A stretch of 60,082 nucleotides of DNA, the filler included, from Platydemus manokwari (lineage: Eukaryota), in the NCBI GenBank assembly GCA_037951405.1. It is 5 parts of 5 records of this genome, joined end to end, with 100 filler letters (N's around TTAATTAATTAA, not from the genome) between each part and the next. Parts side by side here need not be neighbours in the genome. Positions count along the whole stretch, not along the records: positions 45,697 to 60,082 come from JBBMOY011470307.1; 4 more parts are not named here. One strand, given 5' to 3'. The position numbers and the translations under genes are program-made. This document shows positions 45,697 to 60,082 of the stretch, piece after piece (within the stretch, counting starts at the first letter, position 1; each line of letters starts with the position of its first letter). The notes beneath the pieces are model-generated. The model was given only the letters and a program-made list of their open reading frames with translations. It was not told the DNA's origin and made no database searches.

Positions 45697-46550
45697 ACGG
45701 CTTATATATTTCAGAGAAGGTTAACTTGATTTATCATAGTATAAAGGCTTTGTCTTCGGATTTGTATGTAAAATACAAAGATGTGACATGATTGAATGTA
45801 AATTTGAAAGATCGATAAAAAATACATTCATATAGCAATTTGGTGTCTCCATATTTTCATAAAAACGAAAGAAACCTTTACTAAAGCTTCATCAAAGACA
45901 TTAATGCTCCATATTTGCCAATCTAACGATTCGTGATTAGAATTTTTAATGAATACCACTTTATTCCATGTGATGTCTTATTTCGGTTTATTTTAAATAA
46001 AACAGTCTATCTCGCTTAAACTAGCTGACCTAAAATAGGACATTAAAAATTAATTCTTTTAATTTTAGGTTGGTTTTAGAATTTTCAGAATTTACTAAAT
46101 TGAAAAAATCTGTACTTATAAAGTTATATCACTTTACATTTCATTTAATCAATAATAATTCTTAACATTTTTTAATCTTTCACGATCGATCAAAATATTG
46201 ACGATTTGGCCAATCATCATTTATATTTAATAAATCAATTAAATAAATAAGTAATTTTTCATTTTGTCATTCTCATAGATCAATTTGATAGTTTATGAAA
46301 TCGATAATTAATTTAACTAATAAGTACTTTCGTTACGATTATTAGGTACGGTGTAAAAAGTATTTATTTTTTGATTTATTTAAATATTTATAAAGCAATA
46401 AAAGAGATTATATAACATAATTCGTACCTAACCTATATATAAAATAATCCTATTGCAGAGTGAAATAATAATAATAATAATAAAATAGATTTTCGAAATT
46501 GAATTTAACATGTTGTTTATTTAGTCGTTGTTCTAATTTAGAAATTTAGA

Positions 46551-46596
46551 AATCCCTGGAATGTACTGGTGGAACCCTGGTGAAAAAACCACTGTC
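46551..46596 (+). mobile_element. hAT-type terminal fragment
   Basis: ggaaccctggtgaaaaaaccactg resembles the ...ggaaccctggttgaaaaacactg termini of Buster/Charlie hAT elements. No partner end was seen. Confidence 0.45.
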
Positions 46597-46934
46597 ATAG
46601 AATATATGAATAAAATCGAAATTGTTTTATTCGAACTCCTATAATAGAAAACAATTCAATTCCTGTTCAACAAAGAATATTTACTGATAAATTCAGGTTT
46701 ATTAATTTTTAAATTTTTTCGTTTTTAGTCATAGATAAAGCAAATTGTTATAAGTCGATTATTCCTATTATTTTATTGGATCTTTAATTTTCGATGAATT
46801 GATTTATTTTATTGATACAACATGGTATAGCTATAAGACACTGTAATAAGAACAAAGAATTGTCAAAAATATAAATTGTTTTAACTAATATTTTGAAAAA
46901 ACTATTAATCAATAAAAATTTAGTTCGAAACTAT

Positions 46935-48759
46935 CACTTATTGGAAAATAATTGATGATTGGTAACCTCGAAAGAATTTAGAACAATATATTAGATGTTT
47001 GGAATCAAATTAGAAGTTATATTTCCATAATATTAAATATCACCTTATCATTGTATTGTTTTTTCATCAATTTGTACCATTGGGTTTGATTGTGAGATGA
47101 TTTATTGGTCGTAAGAATTGGTGTTAAATCGACTATTCTAGTGGTCCTCAGATTTTCAGTTTTCATTTGACTATTGGAATCAAGTCTTTCAAGTCGCATT
47201 TTTCTAACATAAACCGATGGTGTTGACTGAGCAGATCTCACAGATCCATATTCCTGTATTTATAACGAAAAACGTTAAGGCAATGATAATTGCTTTTATT
47301 ATGTAATTTACGTTAACACGACCTGACGACAAATCGTTCGCTAATCGAAGCTGACTATTGGTTTGTGATGAATTTGAATGAATATTATCGATGCTTCGAA
47401 AATCTTTTTGATCAAGATAATTGGTGGATGAGTTTCTTAACAATTTCGATTGATTCGACTAAATTGAACATCTTATTCAATGTAATAACAGAAGTAATAG
47501 AAAAAATGACTTCACCACGCTTTTATGTTATTATAAATAGTCGATAATTTAAAGTAATCTTTCAGGAAAATTCTGGAGAATACATAATAATTATTCACAG
47601 TTACTTAAAATGGATAACGTATCATCGTTGCATTAATTCCGTAGTCGGAATGGAATAATTATGTCCTTTCTAATAAGATTGAGAGAGTATTTTAATTGTT
47701 TTTAAGATTATTTGAGTAATTTATTGTTATCTAACTACAATAAAATCCAATATTCATCATCAAATGCCAACTAGTGAAATGATATCAGATTTTAAAGCAA
47801 GGTTATCAAATAAACTAAAACGGGTGAAAATGTCGCAAACAGTGTTGTATACTGAATTCTAGAATTTTCACAAACCAACAATTGATATCTGATTTTAATG
47901 GAAGATATTTATTTTTAATCAAAATCTTTATTTTATTTTAGTTTTATTATATTCGCCTTGAGTTAAATTTATAACAACCTATCTTCATATATTTATATAC
48001 CTACATAATAATAGCTTTACAAAAGTTTTAATTGATTCTTGTATTGCGCAGATAGAACATCACTGAATCTTCTCCTGTGAGATTTCAGGATTATTTTGTG
48101 GAGGGAGTTTATAATGCTTAATATCTCTAATATTTAAGTGACTTTAACTTCGATTAGAATAAACCTTTGATGAATGAAATAAATAGCGTAAATCTTTCAA
48201 ATAAATCAAAGCACCGGGAAAAGGAATATGAGAAAGAAAAGAAGGAACACTGATTCCCAGTAAATTACGGAAGCAAAAATGTTGAATAAAGACATAACTG
48301 ATTATCAATCGATGACAGAAAAAAGTCTGAGAAAAATATTATTGAATGAGAGAATGAGTTATTCTAGTTAAATGTCTTTCAGAGTTACAAGATATAAAAG
48401 AGTGACGGGATCTGTGACAATGCATCTATATCGATCGTTTCAAATCTTAATTATTGAAATGATTTGTTTTAAATCATTCCAAATTTTTAAACAATTCTCA
48501 TACACAGCTTAATTTCGTCTGAATAATATTTTTTGCTGGCATATTAAAATCTATTACGCAACACGTTTAACACATTTATTAACACCGGATGAATTTAAGA
48601 ATCCAAGATGAACATCAACACAGTTATAAATAATAAGTTATAAACGAATCTGTCAAAAAGGTTATACATAAAAATACTAACTGAATTCTCCTGTTGCAAA
48701 GCTTTGTTGACTTTTATCCACTCAGATAGGAGCATTCCACTGTTTTTAAATGATGCCAT
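46935..48759 (-). CDS. Putative spliced gene for a small Ser/Asn-rich protein of unknown function
   Basis: Exons 47458-47312 and 47253-47044 join in frame over a 58-nt GT-AG intron (SNQSKLLRNSS...GRVN|EYGSVRSAQSTP...QYNDK). Candidate last exon about 46967-46935 (VTNHQLFSNK*). Candidate first exon 48759-48682 (MASFKNSG...QQENS|gttagt, phase 0). The terminal exons are speculative. Confidence 0.45.
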
Positions 48760-49399
48760 TTTGTTTTGATCTAAAAGAAAAATTCGTCCTTTATTACAAA
48801 ATTTAGTCAATTACTGAAGGAGTAATATTGAACTTTTCAGAAATACTATTTTTCCCAAAATTAAGTTGCTATAGCAACCACCACCAGAAATGAAGTCAAA
48901 ATCTAGAGAGATGGTGTAAAGAAATTTAAATAATAAATATCGTTTTAGTATTGATCGATTTCTATTGGATGTTCACAATGGAAACAACAAAAGAAATTCC
49001 ATGTTTGGCCTGAGAGAGTTCTCTAAGAATTTTATATTCAATTTGGCCATTGGCTTACCTGTTAGAAAACCAACTAACGTAAAAATAGATTTCAAATAGA
49101 TAAGCGGATATCAGATCATTAAACCCGTTGTTTCTTCATCCTTAAAGGGAATTATTTTTCAATTGAATGCCCTTCCGAGTGACAATTGTAACAATTGTCA
49201 GATAAATTAGGTTATGACAGGTTCCGTGAAAGACAATTCCAGAAAGTTTATCACTTCATTGATCAAAATTAATTTTTAATGACTTTCCTTAGATAAATTG
49301 GTCAATGCTTTCATTTGCAGTCCTCTTAAAAAATAATTTAAGATCGATTAAATTTTTATAGTAATTATATTTTTGATTAAATTTGGGACACATTACTTC

Positions 49400-49740
49400 C
49401 ACCCCAATAAGTGAATTTTGTTATCATTTAAATATCACTATTTTCTTACTTTTTGGTCCTAGTATTTTGTTAATGTTACTGTTGTACTTTTTAATATAAT
49501 TGACAATGTCCGTATCTTATTGACCACTTGTATTTGTTCTTTCTTCGACTCGATCACAATTACTCTATTGTGAAGACGAGATAAGTTTCAATAGACACTG
49601 TTATTATTAATCCCTTGTTTAAGATTTAACTCAACATTACTTTAAATACTAAAGAGGTGGTGAAATAACAATGAGCGATAATTAATACTGTCGATGAAAT
49701 TATCCTTATGCCCACTTGGTTGTAATGAGATCGTCAGGTT
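49400..49740 (-). mobile_element. LINE reverse transcriptase fragment (decayed)
   Basis: Minus strand DSINYRSL...TSLVFKVML resembles the NYRPI.L.S...K motif at the start of non-LTR RTs. Confidence 0.35.
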
Positions 49741-51198
49741 TTTGATTAAATAAACTTTATTGATTCGGTAACATATGATTTTAGATGTGTATGTTTGGGT
49801 TTTGAAAATAACTAAATCGAACTAATTTTCACCTGGCGTTATGTACAATTTCATGGCATTTTGTATCCATTTCATTGTGTACGATGATATGTAGATTTGC
49901 CGTTTGTATTAATTTTTATTGTATTCCTTTTATCTTGAATCTGATCAATATTTGTGTTTTATAATTTGATAATTCTCGGAAAGCTTTAGTTAAATAAGTT
50001 TATTAAAAATCATATTTATAAAATAATATGATGGATATTTGCATTATTTATCTCCATAAATATTTAATGATCAAAATAATAATATCTGAAAAACCCCATT
50101 AAAGTTTCCCGTATAATAAATTTATCCACAAAACGATAATCTGTAATATATTATCGTGCAATGACATTGTAAAATAAATTCTCACCTATTATCGCACAAA
50201 ATATATTGAGGTAGTGAATAAAATATTCCCAATAAGGTGACGAATGATATTGAAATTTATAAATAAAGAAATTCTGACATCTTATGCCAACTGGCTGATC
50301 AAAAACCCAACTCGGTTTGATATGAAAATGTTTATTGTAATTAACAGATACACCACTTTTTAAGTATACAACAATTAAATAAAAATGGCTATAAATCACT
50401 ACTTATATTTGTCAATGATTTTAAATATACTTTTATACAAATAAACGCTGGACAAAAACTTCCCAGTGTGCAACTTCAGGATAGCAACTTCAGGACCAAC
50501 CAGACCCGTCGTGCTTATTGGGTATGTGTCCTTCTCAAGAGAGGTTTCCGAGCTCGGCTCGATAGATAGGAAGAATATACGATATAAATAATCAATATAG
50601 ATTTTAGACGAACGTATCTTACTTGAACCTAGTATCTTCCTCGGCAATTAGTATATTTCTAAACTCTTCCTATATTTCTATAGGGCATATACTTGATGGC
50701 AACTTCGAAGAAATTGGATTTGACAACTGCGGCAATATCAATCTTCTTGACGATTAACACACTATAAGTTAGTGGTTTCCAATTAAATGGAGTTCTTAGT
50801 TGTTTCTTCAGGTTACGGGCAAAGGCATATGATGTTTAACTGCCTTATATATAGTTACTGAGTCATGGGGTAAATATTACGTTCGAATAAAATATGCGGG
50901 CTCAATTTCCTCTTTATGGTGATGACTTTTATAAATTCAATAGGAATATTTTCCCGAAGTTAGTTGTCATGCGGATTTAATTGTTGATAATATTTTAAAT
51001 ACGGTTAAAAGTCGGGTGAAAATATTGATTTAATATTTAATATTTTTGGTTACCAAACTAAAATAAGTCCTAATTAAACTTATTTTATCGATCTAAATTG
51101 ATTTAATTTTAATATTAACTTCTAAATTACCATAAAATAGTATTTAACTATTTTATTTAATGATAACAATATTTTATTATTAAAATCAGAAATCTTTA

Positions 51199-51200
<2 letters not shown>

Positions 51201-51230
<30 letters not shown>

Positions 51231-51231
51231 T
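51201..51231. repeat. (ATT)n microsatellite
   Basis: Directly visible. Confidence 0.9.
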
Positions 51232-53569
51232 AACCAAAAATATCAATTTACTTATTAATAAAGGTTTTTCCTATTTTATTATTAATATTTTTCTTTGCTT
51301 ATAAATTAAAATTGTTTGCACGTTGAAAAGCCTGTATGATAAAAACGAAAAATAATACTAGCAATTGAAACCAAAACCTTTACAATATAAAAATTACTAC
51401 TTATATATACTTATATCGAGGTTCATGCAAAATAAATTGTCAATTTTAAAAGTCAATTTCCCAAATACCCCAACATTTCCAACATGAAAACAAAAATGCA
51501 TCGCATCAAATAATATTCGAATACAAATTCTACGAGTGACTCGTTCCTGCCTTCCTAAGGCAGTACTCACACAGTTATTGTATGCAATTTAGAACAGGAT
51601 AGCGGAAGATCATTCTGTTCTGCAGAATAGAATCCATATATGTTCAGTGTTTTATTGGAAAACCCTACATTGGTATAAAATACTGAACGTTATTATACAT
51701 CGTTTATTTTTCATTATGGAGTTTTTACTCAATCATCTCCATTAAAATAAAGTTTATTAATTGTCATCTAAAGCAATAATTGTAAAGTTTGGTGTATGTT
51801 GTATCATCGGCTTTTAAGTTTTGTTTTGTTTTTTTTATTTAGTCATCAAACTGTATAATTGGTTTTTAATAATATATATTTTTGATTAAACGCCTTAGTT
51901 ATTGATTAAATAGTTCATTATTATTGGTGTTATATAGGTTTAGGAATTAAGGTAGGGTGCATTGACTTACACTGATCGTTAAGATATATCACTATTGCCT
52001 CAACTATTGCCTTCATACAATAAAGTTGTGTGAGATGAAGAATTAAATTACAAAAAGATTTATCACACCTGCTGCCTTAATCAAGAACATGTTGAGACTG
52101 ATTAAGAAAATAGTGATATTAAACAGAGATAAGGTTAATAATAAAATTAAAAACAAATAAGGTCAGAACTTAACACGTAAACACGGATGAAATAATAGAT
52201 GATCAAGCAATTCGTCGAGCGTTGCAGTTTATAGGACTCATTCCTCATACTTTAGAAAAGAAGAAATTCAATGAGGTTCAGATTAACTCCATAAATAGGA
52301 TATGTAAGACCGAATATAAATACGTATGAATTTATAGGAACTGGTCTCTTGCTTACAATCTGAAAACAGTTATTGTTGTATGGGAAGAATTCTAGGACAA
52401 GTATTCTTATTAACAAACAGGGCATATAACTTCTGACAATTGGATTCACAAGAAATTTACTTAATTAGAATAAACTTATGGCTTCATAATGTAATTCTTC
52501 CAATGGTTCCAAAATTGTTGTATGAATCTGTACTTATACTGAAATATATTCCCTCCTGATTTTAGTGGAAATAGTTAATTGCGTTTATATTTCAGTGTAA
52601 AAAGGATCGAATTATTTATAATTGGATAATTTTATTTTATTGAATATGGGGAATAATTTTGTTTCATCACAGAATGATGGGATGGTTATTCTATAATAAA
52701 ATTTTATAACATTTTAAATTTCTTTATCTTTGCCATTGAGATATACGTATTTTTATTATTTCATTATCTCTTGCCATATGGGTTTATATAAGATTAATTT
52801 TTTGAAATATTATTGTAGGGATTTTTAATGAATTTTGAAAAATTTTAAAATTAGATTTTTAAATTACAGATGTATTAAATTTTATTTGGTGGGCTCTCGA
52901 TTTCCTAACACGCCAATAGAAGTGTTAAGTCACTGTTATCAGATATTATAAATTAAATAACAAAAATAATGCGAGAATTCGATTACCAAAATTGGATGAA
53001 GTTTAAACAAAGCGATAGAAAGAAGTACTCTGGCTGTTGCTAAGAGATAATGTAAACTACAGTACTATGAGAATGATTAAATGTAAAGTACCAAAAATCA
53101 ATAACCTCGCAACAGTTTGTTTTCATAGGTTAATAAAGATACACTAGTTAAGTAAAATTTGTGATAAAATTCATAATATTAACGATAACCACATTAAACT
53201 ATTTATATAAATCACCATTATGTATCCCAGATATACGAGATCATCTTAAAAAAAATTAGTCAATATCGACTGTAATCGAAAGAAATATTTACATTTTATT
53301 TTTTAAAAGACATGGATATATACAGAAGAAACAATTCCGAACATTCCATTGTATTGACAGTAGATTTCATTTATTCCACTAAAATTAAAAATTTTTCTTA
53401 CTTATTGTTTGGAATCATTTCGAGTGTTCCATCAAAGAATTATAAACATTCTCAAAATTATAAAATGGAATATTAAATATTTAGTAAATTTAAAAATTTG
53501 ATTTTGAGGCTTTTTTATGATATTTTTCATTTTCTAAAACTATTTGAAAGCGTGATCGCAAATACTCAT

Positions 53570-54788
53570 CAATTATAATTATGTCAAAAAGAATATTGAA
53601 CCCCTCTCCAACATTTTCGTTCAAGTTTTCTGCATATAATTTTCATTTGTTCAATAAGGATATCATTCTTGGAATTATTTGCAACTGATCCATGTTTTAT
53701 GGGATGTACCTGCTATATAACCTACAATTTTGACCAATGACCCGAAGATATTCGTAAGCAACTCAAAATTGTGTTAAGCTCAAAAGCAAGCTTATTTTGA
53801 GTTAAACGTGTCGTATGCTGTCGAGCGTTATCGTGAAAGAAACGGAACTTTTCAAAACTGTTTCCACACAAACAGCGTCTCTTTTCTCGAATCGCATCTA
53901 CGACTTTGTTCAACCAAGTGCAGTAAATTTCGGCGTTTATGTTTTATCCAAAAAAATAGTTGCGATGTGCTTTTGTGCTGTCAAACATTGACAAATTGAT
54001 GTTGTTGGTTTATCACCGGCATTGTATTAAGGTCGGTTGTGATAAGATCTATTTGCATTCTTCTAATATACCTACATCTCATCCACTGTTATGAGTTGGG
54101 ATAGAAAGTCGTTCCGTTGGAGCACGGCTAAAAAATCGCTACATGTACTTTCTCTCCTAGCTTTATTTTCATATGACAAACCTTTGGCAGCTATCTGTTT
54201 GCCAAGTACTTTTCAATTTTATGCAAGTGTCGAAGTACTGTTATGTGAGACAACGACAGCTCTCCTGCTATATTACGTGATATACCATATTTGCCATATG
54301 TCAGAAACTCTTTGATTTCTATATCATCTTTAACCAATGGTCGCTGACTTATCGCTTCAAAGTCAACAACGAAAAATTACCAACAATGAATTTTGCAATT
54401 ATTGACTGGCAGTTTCTCGAAGACACGGTAACTGTGCTAAGTATGGAGTTAATCTTCTTCTCAATTTCTGGTGGATTGATTCCATCTTTCCACAAAAAAT
54501 AGGTCAGCTTTTTCAAGTCGCTATTCTTAAACTCCATCATATGCCACAAAATAATATTTTTAAAATGATAGCTATCTAAAACAATTATTTAATTATAAGA
54601 TAGAAATTAAACATTTTAAAAAAGATTTAATAATGCACTTAAACTAAACATTTCTACATAAAACATTGAAATTTTTTTAGATTTAAATCGATTGATCCTT
54701 TGTTTATATTTCCAATTTGCATATTCTCTGTAATTGTTAAATAAATATTATTTTATATCTGATAAGACTTTCGTTCCGATCCTATATA
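53570..54788 (-). mobile_element. Decayed mariner transposon
   Basis: N-terminal HTH MEFKNSDLKKLTYFLWKDG...AKFIVGNFSL (54349-54540). First catalytic motif LITVDE (about 54078-54095). Second motif FFHDNARQH (about 53815-53842). Candidate 5' TIR TA-TAGGATCGGAACGAAAGTCTTATCAG at 54759-54786. The third Asp motif and the 3' TIR were not found. Confidence 0.88.
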
Positions 54789-54862
54789 AAGTTGTTAATA
54801 TAACTCACATTACCGTCTCACCTCTGAGAATCGAGATCTTGAGAAGACAGTGAAACTTTCAC

Positions 54863-54863
<1 letters not shown>

Positions 54864-54949
<86 letters not shown>
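54864..54949. repeat. (TAA)n microsatellite
   Basis: About 85 bp with one interruption. Confidence 0.97.
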
Positions 54950-54950
<1 letters not shown>

Positions 54951-55346
54951 TTTTATCGTCGGGTAATAATTTTTTACCCCTGTTGATGTTCTTTAATATC
55001 ACATCGACCGCAACGTATCGATTAAATTTAAATTTTTATAATTAAATTAATAATAATTATTATTTTCTTTAGTGTGTAGGTGTTGAACAATTACTATCTA
55101 CAAGGAAGTAAGTAATTTTGGATACTGATACTCGTAGGAACAAAATCGTGAATATCAATGCTTTAAGCCAATCACAAATGTTTATAATTAATACAAAACA
55201 GCATAAATATCAGATTTATCTTTAATCGATGTTTTCAAATTGAAGGATAACGTAAACATTGATTAGCAATATTAGATGCTTTAGTGTATAACGGTAAAGT
55301 TAGGTTATAATTGTAGAAAATAAATCATGTGTGGAGTCCAACAGAT

Positions 55347-56994
55347 TTAAGATGTCCAGTCATACGGAACTGAATAAACATTAGCAAATTCATCTGTTAT
55401 TTTATTATCCGATGATGCCTGATTGGTAGCTTAAAATAGAAACAGAAAATATAATTGTTATGAAATGAAATAAAGCAATACCTTGAATATTGCTAGTGAT
55501 GTTAATTTGCTGATTTAAAATGGGATTCATTTCTAATCCTCCAGCTGCTATGTTAGCAGACGTATTTTGTTGCATTAAATTGATTTCACGAAACTGAGGT
55601 TTTTTACTGTTGAAATCGTTCATTTGACCACTTCCAGTTCCAGTATATCCTCCCCCATCACGACCCGAATAATTTCCTTGTCCTCCACCACCTTCGCCCA
55701 TTAATCCACCACCTCCTGCAAAAGTTCCCCATTGATTTGCTGCACCTACATATCCAACGTTAGCACCAAACAAACTGCTAGCTCCTCTAGCTCCGTCATT
55801 TCCTTCGCCAATACCACCACCAAATCCTCCTGATCCTTCAACATAACTCATCATTCCCAATTGTGCCATATTATTTCCTCTATTCAAATTATTTGCACCG
55901 ATAGGAATTTGTTCTACATTTTTTATTGTCTGCTCCTGAGAAAAAGATTCGACGTAGCTTTCATTCATATAAGTTCCTTAAATAATAATATTATAACCTT
56001 TTTATTGTACATAATTATTTAAATTACCTGGTTGCGAAGGGGAATTTAATATCTGACTTTGAATATTTCCTTGTGAGGCGGGATTCCCAAAAAACACTTT
56101 TAAAATGATCAATACAGTTTTATTTAAAAAAATTAAAATAACTTGGTTGTGAAGGCGTGTTTATTATCTGACTTTGCATATTTCCTTGTGCAGCTGGATT
56201 CATAAAAAGCACTTGAAAAAATTATCAACATATTGATCTGATCAATAAAATTAAAATCACTTTGTTGAGGAGTGTTTATTATTTCACTATAGATATTTCT
56301 TTGTGCAACGGGATTTCCATAAAACGCTTTTAAAATTATCAATATATTTTTATTAAAAAATTTAAATCACTTGGTTGTGAAGGCGTGTTTATTATCTGGC
56401 GTTGCACATTTCCTTGTGAAGCAGGATTCCCAAAAAACACTGGATAAAAGTATACATTTATTGATTTAATAAAAATAAATTAAATCACTTGGTTGAGAAG
56501 GAGTGTTTATTATCTGACTTTGCACATTTCCAGGTAAAGCAGGATTTCCATAAATCACTTGATAAAGATATCATTATATCGATGTCATCAAAAAAATTAT
56601 ATCACTTTGTTGTGAAGGAGTGTTTATTATCTGGCTGTGAATTATTCCTTGTGAAGCAGGATTCCCAAAATACACTGGATAAAAGTATATATTTATTGAT
56701 TTCATTAAAATAATTCAAATCACTTTGTTGTGAAGGAGTGTTTATTATCTGACTTTGCATATTTCCAGGTAAAGCAGTACTTGGTTCCATGGTACTGTTC
56801 AGTATTTTTGCATCCACTGGCACAGTGGGAGTTTCATTTAAATCACTTGAGAAGGAAAAAAAGGAAGAATATCTTAATTTTAATATAAAATTCAAAAATG
56901 TTTTAAAAATATTTCCCCAAACTTACACAGTCACTGCAGCTCCGGAAATTGAAAATGTTGTCATACCAACAGATAAGGCCATTATAAAATTCAT
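55347..56994 (-). CDS. Putative secreted repeat protein (~392 aa): signal-like N-terminus, seven 22-23-aa repeats (first partial), Gly-rich domain
   Basis: Exons 56994-56927, 56845-56724, 56674-56606, 56557-56489, 56439-56371, 56326-56261, 56211-56143, 56096-56028, 55976-55482 and 55429-55347 give 1179 nt in frame with all GT-AG introns (44-52 nt, first 81 nt). Repeat consensus MFFGNPASQGNxQSQIINTPSQP. The protein ends VYSVPYDWTS*. An additional short upstream exon (MKIPN, about 57094-57109) is possible. Confidence 0.85.
56028..56790 (-). repeat. Tandem array of ~110-118-bp exon+intron units
   Basis: aatcacttKgttgtgaaggMgtgtttattatctg recurs at about 56025, 56140, 56256, 56366, 56484, 56601 and 56719. 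Confidence 0.95.
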
Positions 56995-59324
56995 AAAAAA
57001 TGTCCCTACAATTTTAAATCGAATTGAATTATTGTAGAAATTTAGAAAATAAGATATGAAGATTTCTAATCTTTTTGAATGCAAGCAAAAAACTATTAGG
57101 AATCTTCATATAAATGCAAACTCTAATGAACGACGAGCAGGTTCATAGTAATTATGTAAGATGGAATTGACTCAGATTCGGACACTGTGGTTAATATCAA
57201 TAGAGTCATGCGGTTGAAATAACGTAGTTAAGGCTACATAAATGAACTAACAGTAGTCCATTAATGACTTTTCGTGCATGTAAACATTATATTAACGTTA
57301 TAAGGGAGATTCATAAATGGAAATGTTAATGTTGCATGTATAATCTGTATGTACTTTGTTTAAAAGCATATTAATTAGTGATTAATTAACCTCCAGGCCA
57401 TGTTTACATAATCAGAATTTAGACAATGTATATAACATGGTAATCGTTGTAAATAAATTGTTCCTTATTAAAAGTCTTCTAACTAACAGACATAAATTGG
57501 ACTTGAAGTGATATTAAATGGGTATTTTTCAAGATTTTTCGAGAGAAAAATATTTTATATACATTCATTCTTTTACAACGAAACCATTATTAACTTTCAA
57601 ATATCATTAAATCCTTTTTAAAATTCTTTTTCGCATTTTTATTTTTAATATGTGAAATACGATATCGGCCAATGAGAATTACCGTATGTGGCAATTGGAT
57701 TGATATTAGAAATTGGTGATGCTGGAAAAAAAATTATATTGGCACATAAAATGTTATTATAGCAACTAACGACAATATGTTATGTTGCAGAATCCAAAGT
57801 TTTGACCTAGACTTCTACTCAAAGTTGACGACGGGCTGACATAACAGTATGGCTGATTAGTGTAGGCTGGATCGCTGGTTGCAACTCTAAGTCGTATAGT
57901 TGGGTTAAAAATTTGAATTCATCAAATTTGAAAATTTGAAATATCCTCATGTTAAATATCTGTTGAGGCTGGATATTGAAAATTGTAATTATAATTACAA
58001 AGCTACGCTTAAAAATATATTGCGATCCTATTGGGAATCACATTCAAAGAGTGAGGTCAATCCACAATTAAAAACTCACAATTAAATATTCAGCACCGAA
58101 AAGATAAAATATCGACACAATCCAGATAGGTATGAAGATACCGACTTCGAAATACTGAAAATTATTTACTATATTCAACTTCTTTTATAGAATTGCTGTG
58201 TGTGATCACCTGCTATCTCGTGGCTTTACTTTTTTGCCAAAATCATCTTCTAAATCACAGACAATTAGCTTATTTTGATATTTGTTACCATTTGTTGATT
58301 TGCGTCAATTGATGATCAAATTTATTTTATCAACTGATATTTTTTAAGACGTCTGAGCGGCTATTGGGACTTGCGCTCATCAAATCTTTGTGTTATGCTG
58401 ATGTCTTCCCGTAATTCTCTTATTTAATTTGTTTTACTGAACAATCATAAGTAATACTTATGAGTAGCTGAGGATGAAGATATATCTTATTATATGCAAA
58501 TGATAATAATAAACAGTAGTTACATGGGGAATTTTACTAAAAAATCCGTCACATGTGTAAATACCCAAAATCTCATTTATAAGGTAAAAGTTTTATATAA
58601 ATTATTCGTTTAAGAATTCTTTTTTAAATAGTCTAGGAGACTATCAAGTTTTATATAAAAATTGAAAATTTAGTTGCTAAATTGTCGACTGAGGATTTTG
58701 CAAATTTTATCCTTAAGTAAACTACGTTGCGTATCAATCCATGTATTGATATTTAAATAGGTATTCTAAATAAATTTTTAAATAGTTTTAAAATTCATTG
58801 ATTTATTTGAGAATTAAAGACCTGCAACTTCTTATATTTGTATTAACTTGTGATTCCTTTGATTCTGTTAGCGACAATAAATCTTTTGAAATCTAATAAT
58901 CATTACAATTAAAACTTGTGTTTTCACTTAACATTAGCGATCTGAAATTATTAGTATCTATTTATGATTTAATTATTCCAAAAATAACTCCTCTTCAACT
59001 ATTTCATACTTCAATCATCTATGATATATTAATATTAGTCTGTCTAGTTTAAGATTTGTCAGTCAATTTTATCTTATTATTTGTATTGTTAATATTTCAA
59101 CCAATAATTTTAAAGACAACTGGAAAAAGTCGATTTTATCGTGTAATTTACACATTTAAGTCAGTTCTTTGGTTAACGATCATTATTTTTTTATTTAATT
59201 ATTTAATATTAAAGCGAGTATTCAACATCGAGATTATAAACTAAAAGTGGTAAATATCGAATAAATCATCTTTACCACTTTTAGCATAGACACTAATTAG
59301 CTGCTGTTTGTTCGTTAAAATTCT

Positions 59325-59907
59325 GGGTCAAAGTTAAGAGAAAGAGTCCTAAAATAAAAATTTTAATATGTTGAGTGTATTACATAAATCTATATAGTTT
59401 ATTCAATTACATTATTTAAAAACATTTTGAATTTTTTATTGAAGTACTTAAGAAGAATATTAGTTGTTTGATGTCAAATAATTAATTCAATAGAGCTGCA
59501 AAATTTGATTATTTGAAAAAGGGATTAAAGTATATCGTAGTGGAATTTATTGAAAAATAGCGAGGACCTCTTTTATAAAATTAGATGCAAATTGAGAGAC
59601 ATTTAAAATTTTTACAATTATTTTTTAAAAATAAGCAATGATATCATTAAACATGTCTGTAATTTATAATTTAAAAAATTTAAATTTAAAAACTCAAATA
59701 ATCGTATAGAATTGTTGTGATTAGAATAGGAACTCGGTTTAAAACTATGTTTTGTCCATGTAAGACATCCTGAAAAGTGAGATATTAACTGAAATATACG
59801 AATAAATCAAACATCGTAATTATATATAAAATTAAGTTATAAAATTATTTCTTGCGCGAATATTTATTATTAAAGTAGGTCAAAGTACCCCTTTTCTTAA
59901 CTTGGTT
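59325..59907 (-). mobile_element. MITE family A, copy 3 (inverted)
   Basis: The interior is the reverse complement of copies 1 and 2 (aaaactcaaataatcgtatagaattgttgtga; aaataagcaatgatatcattaaaca). TIRs gggtcaaagttaagagaaagagtc and accccttttcttaacttgg. Confidence 0.8.
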
Positions 59908-60082
59908 CGAATTCTCCATTTATTAAATTACAAAATTAAGCCAAAAACTGTATTTATTATAACGAGATAATATTTATTCGAGTTTGATCACATTCTTTTT
60001 AAAAATACCGGTATGAAATGAGCGTTTTTTTGTTAAAATGAAACACTAATTTTGAATGGAAAAGTAAAAAACATTTATTCAA

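What the first reader, a model, noticed from the sequence alone, without database searches (positions are those of the whole stretch)
55347..56994. Secreted protein assembled from a tandem array of duplicated symmetric mini-exons with weak GTGAT donors
Seen: what looks like a ~115-bp minisatellite is an exon+intron cassette repeated seven times. Six exons are 66-69 nt and all phase 1-1, each encoding one repeat: MYFGNPASQGIIHSQIINTPSQQ, MIYGNPALPGNVQSQIINTPSQP, MFFGNPASQGNVQRQIINTPSQP, TFYGNPVAQRNIYSEIINTPQQ, MLFMNPAAQGNMQSQIINTPSQP, MFFGNPASQGNIQSQILNSPSQP. The only exon indel is 3 nt, whereas the introns vary freely (44-51 nt), which points to coding selection. Five donors are A|GTGAT and one is A|GTTAT, unlike the GTA donors common elsewhere in the window. 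Any subset of exons can be skipped in frame. Inference: a length-tunable secreted structural protein (adhesive, mucus, rhabdite or eggshell type), architecturally reminiscent of schistosome micro-exon genes but with larger, repeat-encoding exons.
Basis: partly seen in the sequence, partly recalled or inferred. Interest (0 to 1): 0.75.

Follow-up and report, generated by a model that had tools for sequence, protein, structure and literature searches.

The report
Repeat protein gene from duplicated exon-intron cassettes
A 118-bp "minisatellite" in an AT-rich animal-type genome is most likely seven tandem copies of a small exon plus a tiny intron inside an orphan gene for a probably secreted, disordered, Gln/Asn/Gly-rich protein. 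This gene design is already known elsewhere, and no RNA data were available to prove the splicing.

Summary
On the minus strand, 56994..55347 gives a coherent 10-exon, 392-codon model:
- a 68-nt ATG exon with a hydrophobic N-terminus;
- seven homologous cassette exons (exon 2 is a cassette exon with a 53-nt insertion; exons 3-8 are 69, 69, 69, 66, 69 and 69 nt, all phase 1-1), separated by 44-51 nt introns;
- a 495-nt Gly-rich exon;
- an 83-nt last exon.

Evidence that the cassettes are coding is only internal, and each strand is modest:
- the frame is open in 7 of 7 exons;
- the one exon indel is 3 nt;
- GT and AG are kept in all cassettes;
- GC1/2/3 matches the long exon;
- G/C sites are lost 3.5 times more slowly in exons than in introns.

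A neutral simulation is not decisively rejected (P = 0.12 for no stops; P = 0.08 for synonymous excess). The only public run holding the locus is DNA, so no junction was tested.

No homologue, Pfam family, solved structure or confident fold was found, so this is an orphan. Combinatorial exon skipping is arithmetically possible but unsupported, and such short introns argue against it. It is not a micro-exon gene. The closest analogues by design are the schistosome SmPoMuc and MEG-4 genes and the nematode RrCEP genes.

The parts
56927..56994 (-). Exon 1 (68 nt, ATG at 56994, ends in phase 2, donor GTAAGT). It encodes a hydrophobic N-terminus that is probably a signal peptide of about 19-20 residues.
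   Evidence: It holds the first ATG of the open frame. The Kyte-Doolittle 11-residue mean is 1.2-1.7 over residues 1-15. Small residues sit at -3/-1 around residues 17-20.
56724..56845 (-). Exon 2 (122 nt, phase 2 to 1). It is a cassette exon with a 53-nt insertion after its first 7 nt. Donor A|GTGATT.
   Evidence: Alignment A2 shows the acceptor region and exon start are homologous to cassettes 3-5, and the last 62 nt are homologous too.
56028..56674 (-). Six phase 1-1 cassette exons: 56674-56606, 56557-56489, 56439-56371, 56326-56261 (66 nt), 56211-56143 and 56096-56028. Their introns are 56605-56558, 56488-56440, 56370-56327, 56260-56212 and 56142-56097.
56675..56723 (-). Intron 2 (49 nt), the first cassette intron, GTGATT...CCAG.
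55977..56027 (-). Intron 8 (51 nt). Its donor CAG|GTAATT is the best in the gene (8 of 9 matches to consensus). It joins the array to the large exon.
55482..55976 (-). Exon 9 (495 nt, phase 1-1). It encodes a Gly-rich low-complexity region of 164 whole codons and lies in the only open frame longer than 106 codons in the 14.4-kb piece.
   Evidence: It has no Pfam, homologue or PDB match. AlphaFold2 mean pLDDT is 46.7.
55430..55481 (-). Intron 9 (52 nt, GTATTG...TTTTAAG). If retained, the frame runs on for 25 codons into a hydrophobic tail and stops at 55405.
55347..55429 (-). Exon 10 (83 nt, 27 codons plus the TAA stop at 55349-55347).
56846..56926 (-). Intron 1 (81 nt). Its 3' end is homologous to the 3' ends of the cassette introns.

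Best explanation
This is a real, lineage-restricted (orphan) protein-coding gene on the minus strand (56994..55347; 10 exons, 392 codons).

How the repeat domain arose. The central domain grew by unequal crossing-over of a roughly 118-bp unit made of one symmetric phase 1-1 exon (69 nt, one 23-residue repeat) plus one mini-intron (44-51 nt). Part of the growth came in two-cassette steps, hence the 235-bp super-period. Every copy inherited the GT, the AG and a branch-point-like TTGAT or TTAAT.

How it is probably spliced. Introns this short are recognised across the intron, so the default expectation is that all seven cassette exons are spliced in constitutively.

What the product probably is. 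It is probably cleaved after a 19-20-residue signal peptide and secreted. It would be a cysteine-free, Gln/Asn/Gly/Ser-rich, largely disordered protein with this layout:
- seven repeats, each pairing a short aromatic patch (FFG or FYG) with a beta-prone QIIN patch between Pro/Gly turns;
- a Gly-rich tail with scattered aromatic residues.
This composition is typical of self-associating extracellular matrix, glue or fibre proteins.

Shown: the array, the exon/intron arithmetic, frame coherence, composition, and the absence of relatives. Inferred: splicing, secretion, and a structural role.
For: - Array and model.
- Frame coherence. The 68-nt exon 1 ends in phase 2. This exactly compensates the 53-nt insertion in cassette exon 2. 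The cassette frame is also the frame of the 164-codon exon 9.
- The proposed frame is open in 7 of 7 cassette exons. Frame +1 has stops in all seven and frame +2 in one.
- Codon-position GC in cassette exons is 0.48/0.42/0.21, against 0.50/0.45/0.23 in exon 9. Intron GC is 0.17, and the pattern is permuted in the other frames.
- Third positions vary most: 0.25 against 0.17 and 0.16.
- There is one 3-nt exon indel against multiple intron indels.
- GT and AG are invariant in all cassettes while neighbouring positions vary.
- G/C-to-A/T loss per G/C site is 0.086 in exons and 0.306 in introns. A/T-to-G/C gain is equal at 0.065 and 0.068.
- The cassette donors and acceptors are homologous copies of those of exon 2. 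If exon 2 is spliced, the copies carry the same signals.
- The locus is single-copy at about 13x in the only public DNA run, with no variants reported.
- Composition and N-terminal hydropathy.
- No confident fold for exon 9.
Against: - No RNA evidence at all. The only holder of the locus is a DNA run.
- The copies are related by descent, so the internal signals are few independent observations.
- Neutral simulation from the consensus gives P = 0.12 for no stop in any unit and P = 0.08 for the observed synonymous excess (12 synonymous against 37 non-synonymous). dN/dS is therefore not clearly below 1.
- Exon identity (0.77) is only slightly above intron identity (0.69).
- Because the exons are symmetric, a transcript joining exon 2 directly to exon 9 would be equally in frame.
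- No homologue exists anywhere to show conservation.
- The N-terminus lacks a basic n-region and is only moderately hydrophobic.
- Seven of nine acceptors are AAG, which is unusual in most animals. The source organism and its splice norms are unknown.
Confidence: 0.6

Rival explanations
1. The gene is real, but the internal cassettes (exons 3-8, or most of them) are pseudo-exons in what is effectively one roughly 750-nt intron. The mature mRNA joins exon 2, or one cassette, to exon 9, and the array is a decaying minisatellite.
For: Joining exon 2 to exon 9 is in frame. Neutral drift is not formally rejected (P = 0.12 and P = 0.08). Exon identity barely exceeds intron identity. One cassette has an odd GTTATT donor, and exon 6 is the most diverged, with 13 differences from the consensus.
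Against: Every cassette carries the same donor and acceptor as exon 2, so the spliceosome has no visible reason to ignore them. The open frame, in-frame indel, GT/AG retention, GC retention and codon-position periodicity all point the same way.
Confidence: 0.12
2. Micro-exon-gene-like combinatorial system. The cassette exons are alternatively skipped in many combinations, up to 64 in-frame isoforms for exons 3-8, to vary the length or the antigenic face of a secreted protein.
For: All cassette exons are symmetric and no skip junction creates a stop. Donors match the consensus at only 4-6 of 9 positions, while the last cassette has the strongest donor at 8 of 9. There is precedent in schistosome MEGs and SmPoMuc (PMC3961193, PMC2576457).
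Against: No transcript data are available. Exon skipping is associated with long flanking introns and exon definition. Short introns with weak sites favour retention (PMC6142364, PMC1831480), and the introns here are 44-51 nt. RrCEP genes, which have one intron per repeat, show no alternative splicing (PMC5103176). Symmetry is inherited from a single ancestral exon, so it is not independent evidence of design.
Confidence: 0.1
3. The coding unit is only the 187-codon ATG-to-stop ORF (55968..55405), a Gly-rich protein with a hydrophobic C-terminal tail and no signal peptide. The upstream array would then be a non-coding minisatellite, in the 5' UTR or promoter-proximal.
For: The ORF starts with an ATG 3 codons after the proposed acceptor and ends with a 16-residue hydrophobic stretch if intron 9 is not removed. 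No RNA data exclude this.
Against: It does not explain several features of the array. These are the open, periodic frame, its exact phase link to an upstream ATG exon, and the GT...AG bounded AT-rich spacers. The hydrophobic tail is what translating any T-rich intron gives. Intron 9 has a good pyrimidine tract, and exon 10 stays open for 27 codons in the spliced frame.
Confidence: 0.1
4. Not a gene: a chance open frame next to a minisatellite, or a dead gene remnant.
For: There are no homologues in 1.84 billion representative proteins or in other collections, no Pfam family and no expression data.
Against: A 190-codon stop-free frame at 28% GC is the only one longer than 106 codons in 14.4 kb, and it has strong Gly-codon skew. 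Nine GT-AG introns of 44-81 nt link 10 open segments into a single frame.
Confidence: 0.06

Closest known systems
Schistosoma mansoni polymorphic mucins (SmPoMuc), PMC2576457
   Same: A signal-peptide exon is followed by a small symmetric exon that, together with its flanking intron, is tandemly repeated in the genome. Each copy encodes one peptide repeat. A non-repetitive C-terminal part follows.
   Different: There the exon is 27 bp within roughly 1-kb genomic repeats separated by microsatellites, the repeat is a 9-residue mucin unit, and the genes form a multigene family with documented variable transcripts. Here the exon is 66-69 nt within 118-bp units, the repeats are Gln/Asn-rich rather than mucin-like, the locus is single, there is no sequence similarity, and no transcript is known.
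Schistosome micro-exon genes, especially MEG-4/Sm10.3 with tandemly repeated exons (PMC3961193 and its references 15, 19, 20)
   Same: Symmetric exons with lengths that are multiples of three lie between a 5' signal-peptide exon and 3' conventional exons. Exons can be dropped in frame.
   Different: MEG exons are 6-36 bp and make up most of the coding sequence. Here exons are 66-69 nt and 42% of the coding sequence is one 495-nt exon. Introns here are tiny. There is no homology, and the organism and splicing behaviour are unknown.
Rotylenchulus reniformis CEP effector genes (RrCEPs), PMC5103176
   Same: A secreted precursor carries up to 4 tandem peptide domains with exactly one intron per domain. 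These are also lineage-specific genes that arose de novo.
   Different: Those encode plant-hormone-mimic peptides with introns from under 100 to over 700 bp. The repeat here has no CEP or CLE motif. The authors found no alternative splicing.
Repetitive secretory and fibre protein genes with iterated exon-intron units: spider Flag silk and the Chironomus Balbiani ring 3 gene (from my own knowledge, not checked here)
   Same: The structural repeat and its intron are amplified together, and the product is a Gly-rich, disordered secreted protein.
   Different: Those genes and units are much larger. There is no sequence relation. A fibre role here is only inferred from composition.

Membership tests
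Schistosome micro-exon genes (MEG) | Most of the coding sequence lies in micro-exons of 6-36 bp (PMC3961193) | tested here: not met
   Cassette exons are 66-69 nt (exon 2 is 122 nt), and a single 495-nt exon holds 42% of the coding sequence.
Schistosome micro-exon genes (MEG) | Internal exons are symmetric, with lengths that are multiples of three | tested here: met
   Exons 3-8 are 69, 69, 69, 66, 69 and 69 nt, all phase 1-1.
Schistosome micro-exon genes (MEG) | Transcript variation by exon skipping, shown in cDNA | not testable with these tools
   No RNA run holds the locus. The one run available consists of DNA contigs.
Schistosome micro-exon genes (MEG) | Sequence relationship to a MEG family | tested here: not met
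   Exon 9 and the repeat profile have no hits in the protein collections, PDB or Pfam. The spliced full-length protein was not searched.
SmPoMuc-type genes (tandem exon-plus-intron genomic repeats encoding a variable repeat domain) | An exon and its flanking intron are repeated in tandem directly after the signal-peptide exon, with one peptide repeat per exon | tested here: met
   Seven cassettes.
SmPoMuc-type genes (tandem exon-plus-intron genomic repeats encoding a variable repeat domain) | Mucin-type Ser/Thr/Pro-rich repeat and homology to SmPoMuc | tested here: not met
   Ser+Thr+Pro make up 22% of residues, while Gln+Asn+Gly make up 34%. No homologues were found.
Secreted protein (classical signal peptide) | An N-terminal n-, h- and c-region with a cleavage site | tested here: inconclusive
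   A hydrophobic core of about 9 residues (mean Kyte-Doolittle about 2.2) and small residues at -3/-1 near residues 17-20, but no basic n-region. No SignalP tool was available.
Tandem exon-duplication repeat protein (generic) | Homologous adjacent exons with conserved splice sites and a preserved reading frame | tested here: met
   Inclusion in mRNA was not tested.

The most novel reading that the evidence does not exclude
A taxon-restricted secreted fibre or glue protein in which each 69-nt mini-exon encodes one strand-turn unit of a cross-beta or beta-solenoid stack. Each unit would pair an aromatic patch with a QIIN patch like the tau VQIINK steric-zipper core, bounded by Pro/Gly turns. The number of units would be tuned by copy-number change of the 118-bp cassette and/or by in-frame exon skipping. 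That would be a micro-exon-gene-like diversifying design outside schistosomes, built on mini-introns.
Probability: 0.08. Interest if true: 0.65.

Novelty: new member of a known kind. Interest (0 to 1): 0.35.

Why it matters
If transcripts confirm the model, this would be one of the most compact exon-plus-intron repeat units described: 118 bp, with introns near the minimal size. It would give a clean natural example of a minisatellite that is also a coding repeat, and so show how orphan secreted repeat proteins can grow by unequal crossing-over without breaking the reading frame or the splicing. It would also warn annotators that 'minisatellites' in AT-rich, short-intron genomes can hide coding exons. 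As it stands, it is a well-formed but unverified gene model of a known architectural kind. It has no demonstrated function and no evidence for the more exciting combinatorial-splicing idea.

Tried and rejected
Expression
- The look-up of sequencing runs returned one holder, which is DNA. Read laying gave genomic contigs at about 13x. The few 'joints' had 20-21-nt sides in repeats, so I treat them as spurious. Splicing could not be tested.

Homology
- Exon 9 gave nothing with Pfam, the search for homologous proteins, HMMER against 1.84 billion representatives, the ESM Atlas, PDB sequences or JGI metagenome contigs.
- The repeat alignment A1 gave nothing in Pfam. In the PDB its only hit was one chance match at E = 1.6. 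Metagenome contigs gave nothing either.
- A local tblastn of the model against the 14.4-kb piece found no paralogue outside the gene.
- A peptide-string search of the literature gave 0 papers.

Structure
- Single-sequence AlphaFold2 of exon 9 gave mean pLDDT 46.7 and no secondary structure. This is compatible with disorder but does not prove it.

Source organism
- Rfam and tRNA scans of the piece were empty.
- The neighbouring open frames have no Pfam family except weak mariner-type hits.
- The organism stays unknown.

Other
- The bacterial promoter/terminator scan is irrelevant to a eukaryotic gene and was ignored.
- Neuropeptide or hormone precursor was considered and rejected. There are no dibasic cleavage sites flanking the repeats, and the whole protein has only 11 Lys+Arg.
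- Mucin was considered and rejected on composition.

Left out
- It was assembled only inside local scripts to check frame, composition and self-matches.

Full report
WHAT IS THERE

The piece (45697-60082) is 27.8% GC. Tandem Repeats Finder finds one strong array, 56017-56777, with period 118 (6.6 copies, 77% matches) and a 235-bp super-period (3.3 copies, 80%).

Read on the minus strand, the array sits inside a coherent gene model that I rebuilt and checked by script:

| Exon | Coordinates | Length | Notes |
|---|---|---|---|
| 1 | 56994-56927 | 68 nt | ATG; ends in phase 2; donor GTAAGT |
| 2 | 56845-56724 | 122 nt | phase 2 to 1 |
| 3 | 56674-56606 | 69 nt | phase 1-1 |
| 4 | 56557-56489 | 69 nt | phase 1-1 |
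| 5 | 56439-56371 | 69 nt | phase 1-1 |
| 6 | 56326-56261 | 66 nt | phase 1-1 |
| 7 | 56211-56143 | 69 nt | phase 1-1 |
| 8 | 56096-56028 | 69 nt | phase 1-1 |
| 9 | 55976-55482 | 495 nt | Gly-rich |
| 10 | 55429-55347 | 83 nt | TAA stop |

The introns are 81, 49, 48, 49, 44, 49, 46, 51 and 52 nt, all GT...AG. The model has 392 codons and no internal stop.

Exon 2 is a seventh cassette exon. An alignment of exon 2 and its upstream intron end with cassettes 3-5 (A2) shows that its acceptor region and first 7 nt are homologous to theirs. A 53-nt insertion follows, and then homology resumes to the donor. Because 53 is not a multiple of three, exon 2 must be entered in phase 2 rather than phase 1. 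That is exactly what the 68-nt exon 1 delivers. This consistency check is independent of the repeat itself.

ARE THE CASSETTES CODING EXONS?

No RNA evidence could be obtained. The single public run that holds the locus has 0.97 of the sampled words, including the introns. When laid on the locus it gives colinear genomic contigs at about 13x, so it is DNA and probably the source sample. The case therefore rests on internal evidence. This is weakened because the copies share ancestry.

In favour:
- The proposed frame is open in 7 of 7 cassette exons. One alternative frame has stops in all seven and the other in one.
- GC at codon positions 1/2/3 is 0.48/0.42/0.21 in cassette exons, against 0.50/0.45/0.23 in the long exon 9. 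Introns are at 0.17, and the pattern is permuted in the other two frames.
- Third positions are the most variable: 0.25 against 0.17 and 0.16.
- The only exon indel is 3 nt, while the introns carry several indels of 1-5 nt.
- GT and AG are invariant in all cassettes although the adjacent positions vary. Position +3 is G, T or A, and the bases before AG are CC, CA or AA.
- G/C sites are lost at 0.086 per site in exons and 0.306 in introns. A/T-to-G/C gains are equal at 0.065 and 0.068.

Against:
- A neutral simulation from the consensus gives P = 0.12 for no stop arising in any unit. It gives P = 0.08 for as many synonymous changes as observed (12 synonymous against 37 non-synonymous).
- Mean exon identity (0.77) barely exceeds mean intron identity (0.69).

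A mechanistic argument also bears on this. The cassette donors and acceptors are copies of those of exon 2. If exon 2 is spliced, nothing visible would make the spliceosome ignore the copies.

I put about 0.75-0.8 on most cassettes being genuine coding exons, and about 0.6 on the whole explanation including secretion.

THE PRODUCT

Exon 9 lies in the only stop-free frame longer than 106 codons in 14.4 kb (190 codons). It stands out in GC (0.44) and in GC skew.

The model protein has no Cys and only 11 Lys+Arg. It has 50 Gly, 45 Asn, 40 Gln and 37 Ser, and six N-glycosylation sequons. The repeat consensus is xFGNPAxQGNxQSQIINTPSQP, with invariant I, N, P and Q positions.

The N-terminus has a short hydrophobic core and small residues at -3/-1 near residues 17-20, but no basic n-region. 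A signal peptide is plausible but unproven.

Nothing related was found:
- no Pfam family;
- no relative among 5.8 billion clusters within the length band;
- none among 1.84 billion representatives of any length;
- nothing in the ESM Atlas, PDB sequences or metagenome contigs;
- nothing in the literature by peptide string.

Single-sequence AlphaFold2 of exon 9 gives mean pLDDT 46.7 and no secondary structure. The gene is an orphan. Its function can only be inferred from composition. That points to a disordered, self-associating extracellular protein (matrix, glue or fibre), which I hold at roughly one chance in three.

From my own knowledge, the QIIN core of each repeat resembles the amyloid-forming VQIINK segment of tau. 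A 23-residue Gln/Asn/Gly-rich repeat is also the size of one coil of curli-type beta-solenoids. These are leads, not tests.

COMBINATORIAL SPLICING

It is true that any subset of exons 3-8 can be dropped in frame and that no skip junction makes a stop. But that symmetry is inherited from one ancestral exon.

The donors are 'weak' only against the general consensus. GTGATT donors match 4-6 of 9 positions, the gene's own unique last donor GTATTG matches 5 of 9, and the last cassette's CAG|GTAATT matches 8 of 9.

Exon skipping is associated with long flanking introns and exon definition. Short introns with weak sites are associated with intron definition and retention (PMC6142364, PMC1831480). 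With 44-51-nt introns, the expected error is retention. Here it hits a stop within the intron in seven of nine cases. For introns 2 and 6 it shifts the frame, and the stop comes in the following exon.

RrCEP genes, which have one intron per repeat, show no alternative splicing (PMC5103176). I give the combinatorial idea about 0.1.

COMPARISON WITH WHAT IS KNOWN

The design is known: a signal-peptide exon, then a tandemly repeated small symmetric exon with its intron, then a unique 3' part.
- SmPoMuc genes repeat a 27-bp exon with its flanking introns as roughly 1-kb units that encode a 9-residue variable repeat (PMC2576457).
- Micro-exon genes, including MEG-4/Sm10.3 with tandemly repeated exons, use 6-36-bp symmetric exons (PMC3961193).
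- RrCEPs carry one intron per peptide domain (PMC5103176).

The present gene fails the size criterion for micro-exon genes and has no homology to any of these. It works like them architecturally but is not a member. It differs in the compactness of the unit (118 bp, near-minimal introns) and in its Gln/Asn/Gly-rich rather than mucin-like repeat.

LIMITS

- The source organism could not be identified.
The joined protein was assembled only in local scripts and was not sent to any search or folding tool, so full-length searches and a fold of the repeat region remain undone.

VERDICT

This is a well-formed orphan gene of a known architectural kind. It is unverified by expression, and the length-tuning idea has no support.

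Noticed in passing
window 53650-54900 (minus strand): A degenerate mariner-type transposon remnant. Its frame-shifted ORF pieces carry HDNARQH- and ITVDEM-like motifs and give weak Pfam Transposase_1 and HTH hits. Its 5' part, 54450-54900, has contig depth of about 9,000 against about 13 for the gene, so it belongs to a family of several hundred copies in this genome. ENA proteins 67-80% identical exist but are unnamed.
   Followed up: partly
window 54864-54949: An (ATA)n microsatellite of 28.7 copies lies about 400 bp downstream of the gene's stop codon, at the edge of the transposon. Reads appear cut there.
   Followed up: no
window 56017-56777: The array has higher-order structure. Cassette introns fall into three types in the order A B A C B C (intron identity is 0.90 between c2 and c4 and 0.89 between c5 and c7). 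TRF scores the 235-bp period higher than the 118-bp period. This suggests two-cassette duplications and/or gene conversion.
   Followed up: partly
window 55405-55481 (minus strand): If intron 9 is retained, the frame continues for 25 codons into a strongly hydrophobic tail of about 16 residues before a stop at 55405. This is probably just what a T-rich intron translates to, but it would be a membrane-anchored isoform if real.
   Followed up: no
window 56465-56710 (plus strand): An 82-codon stop-free stretch on the opposite strand spans two cassettes, 'introns' included. The 118-bp period is not a multiple of three, so the frame is not repeated. I take it as a by-product of the repeat, not a gene.
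   Followed up: partly
window 50154-50835 (minus strand): Three abutting stop-free segments (58, 82 and 83 codons) lie in a region of raised GC (0.35-0.37) and have no Pfam match. This may be a decayed gene or a transposon ORF.
   Followed up: no
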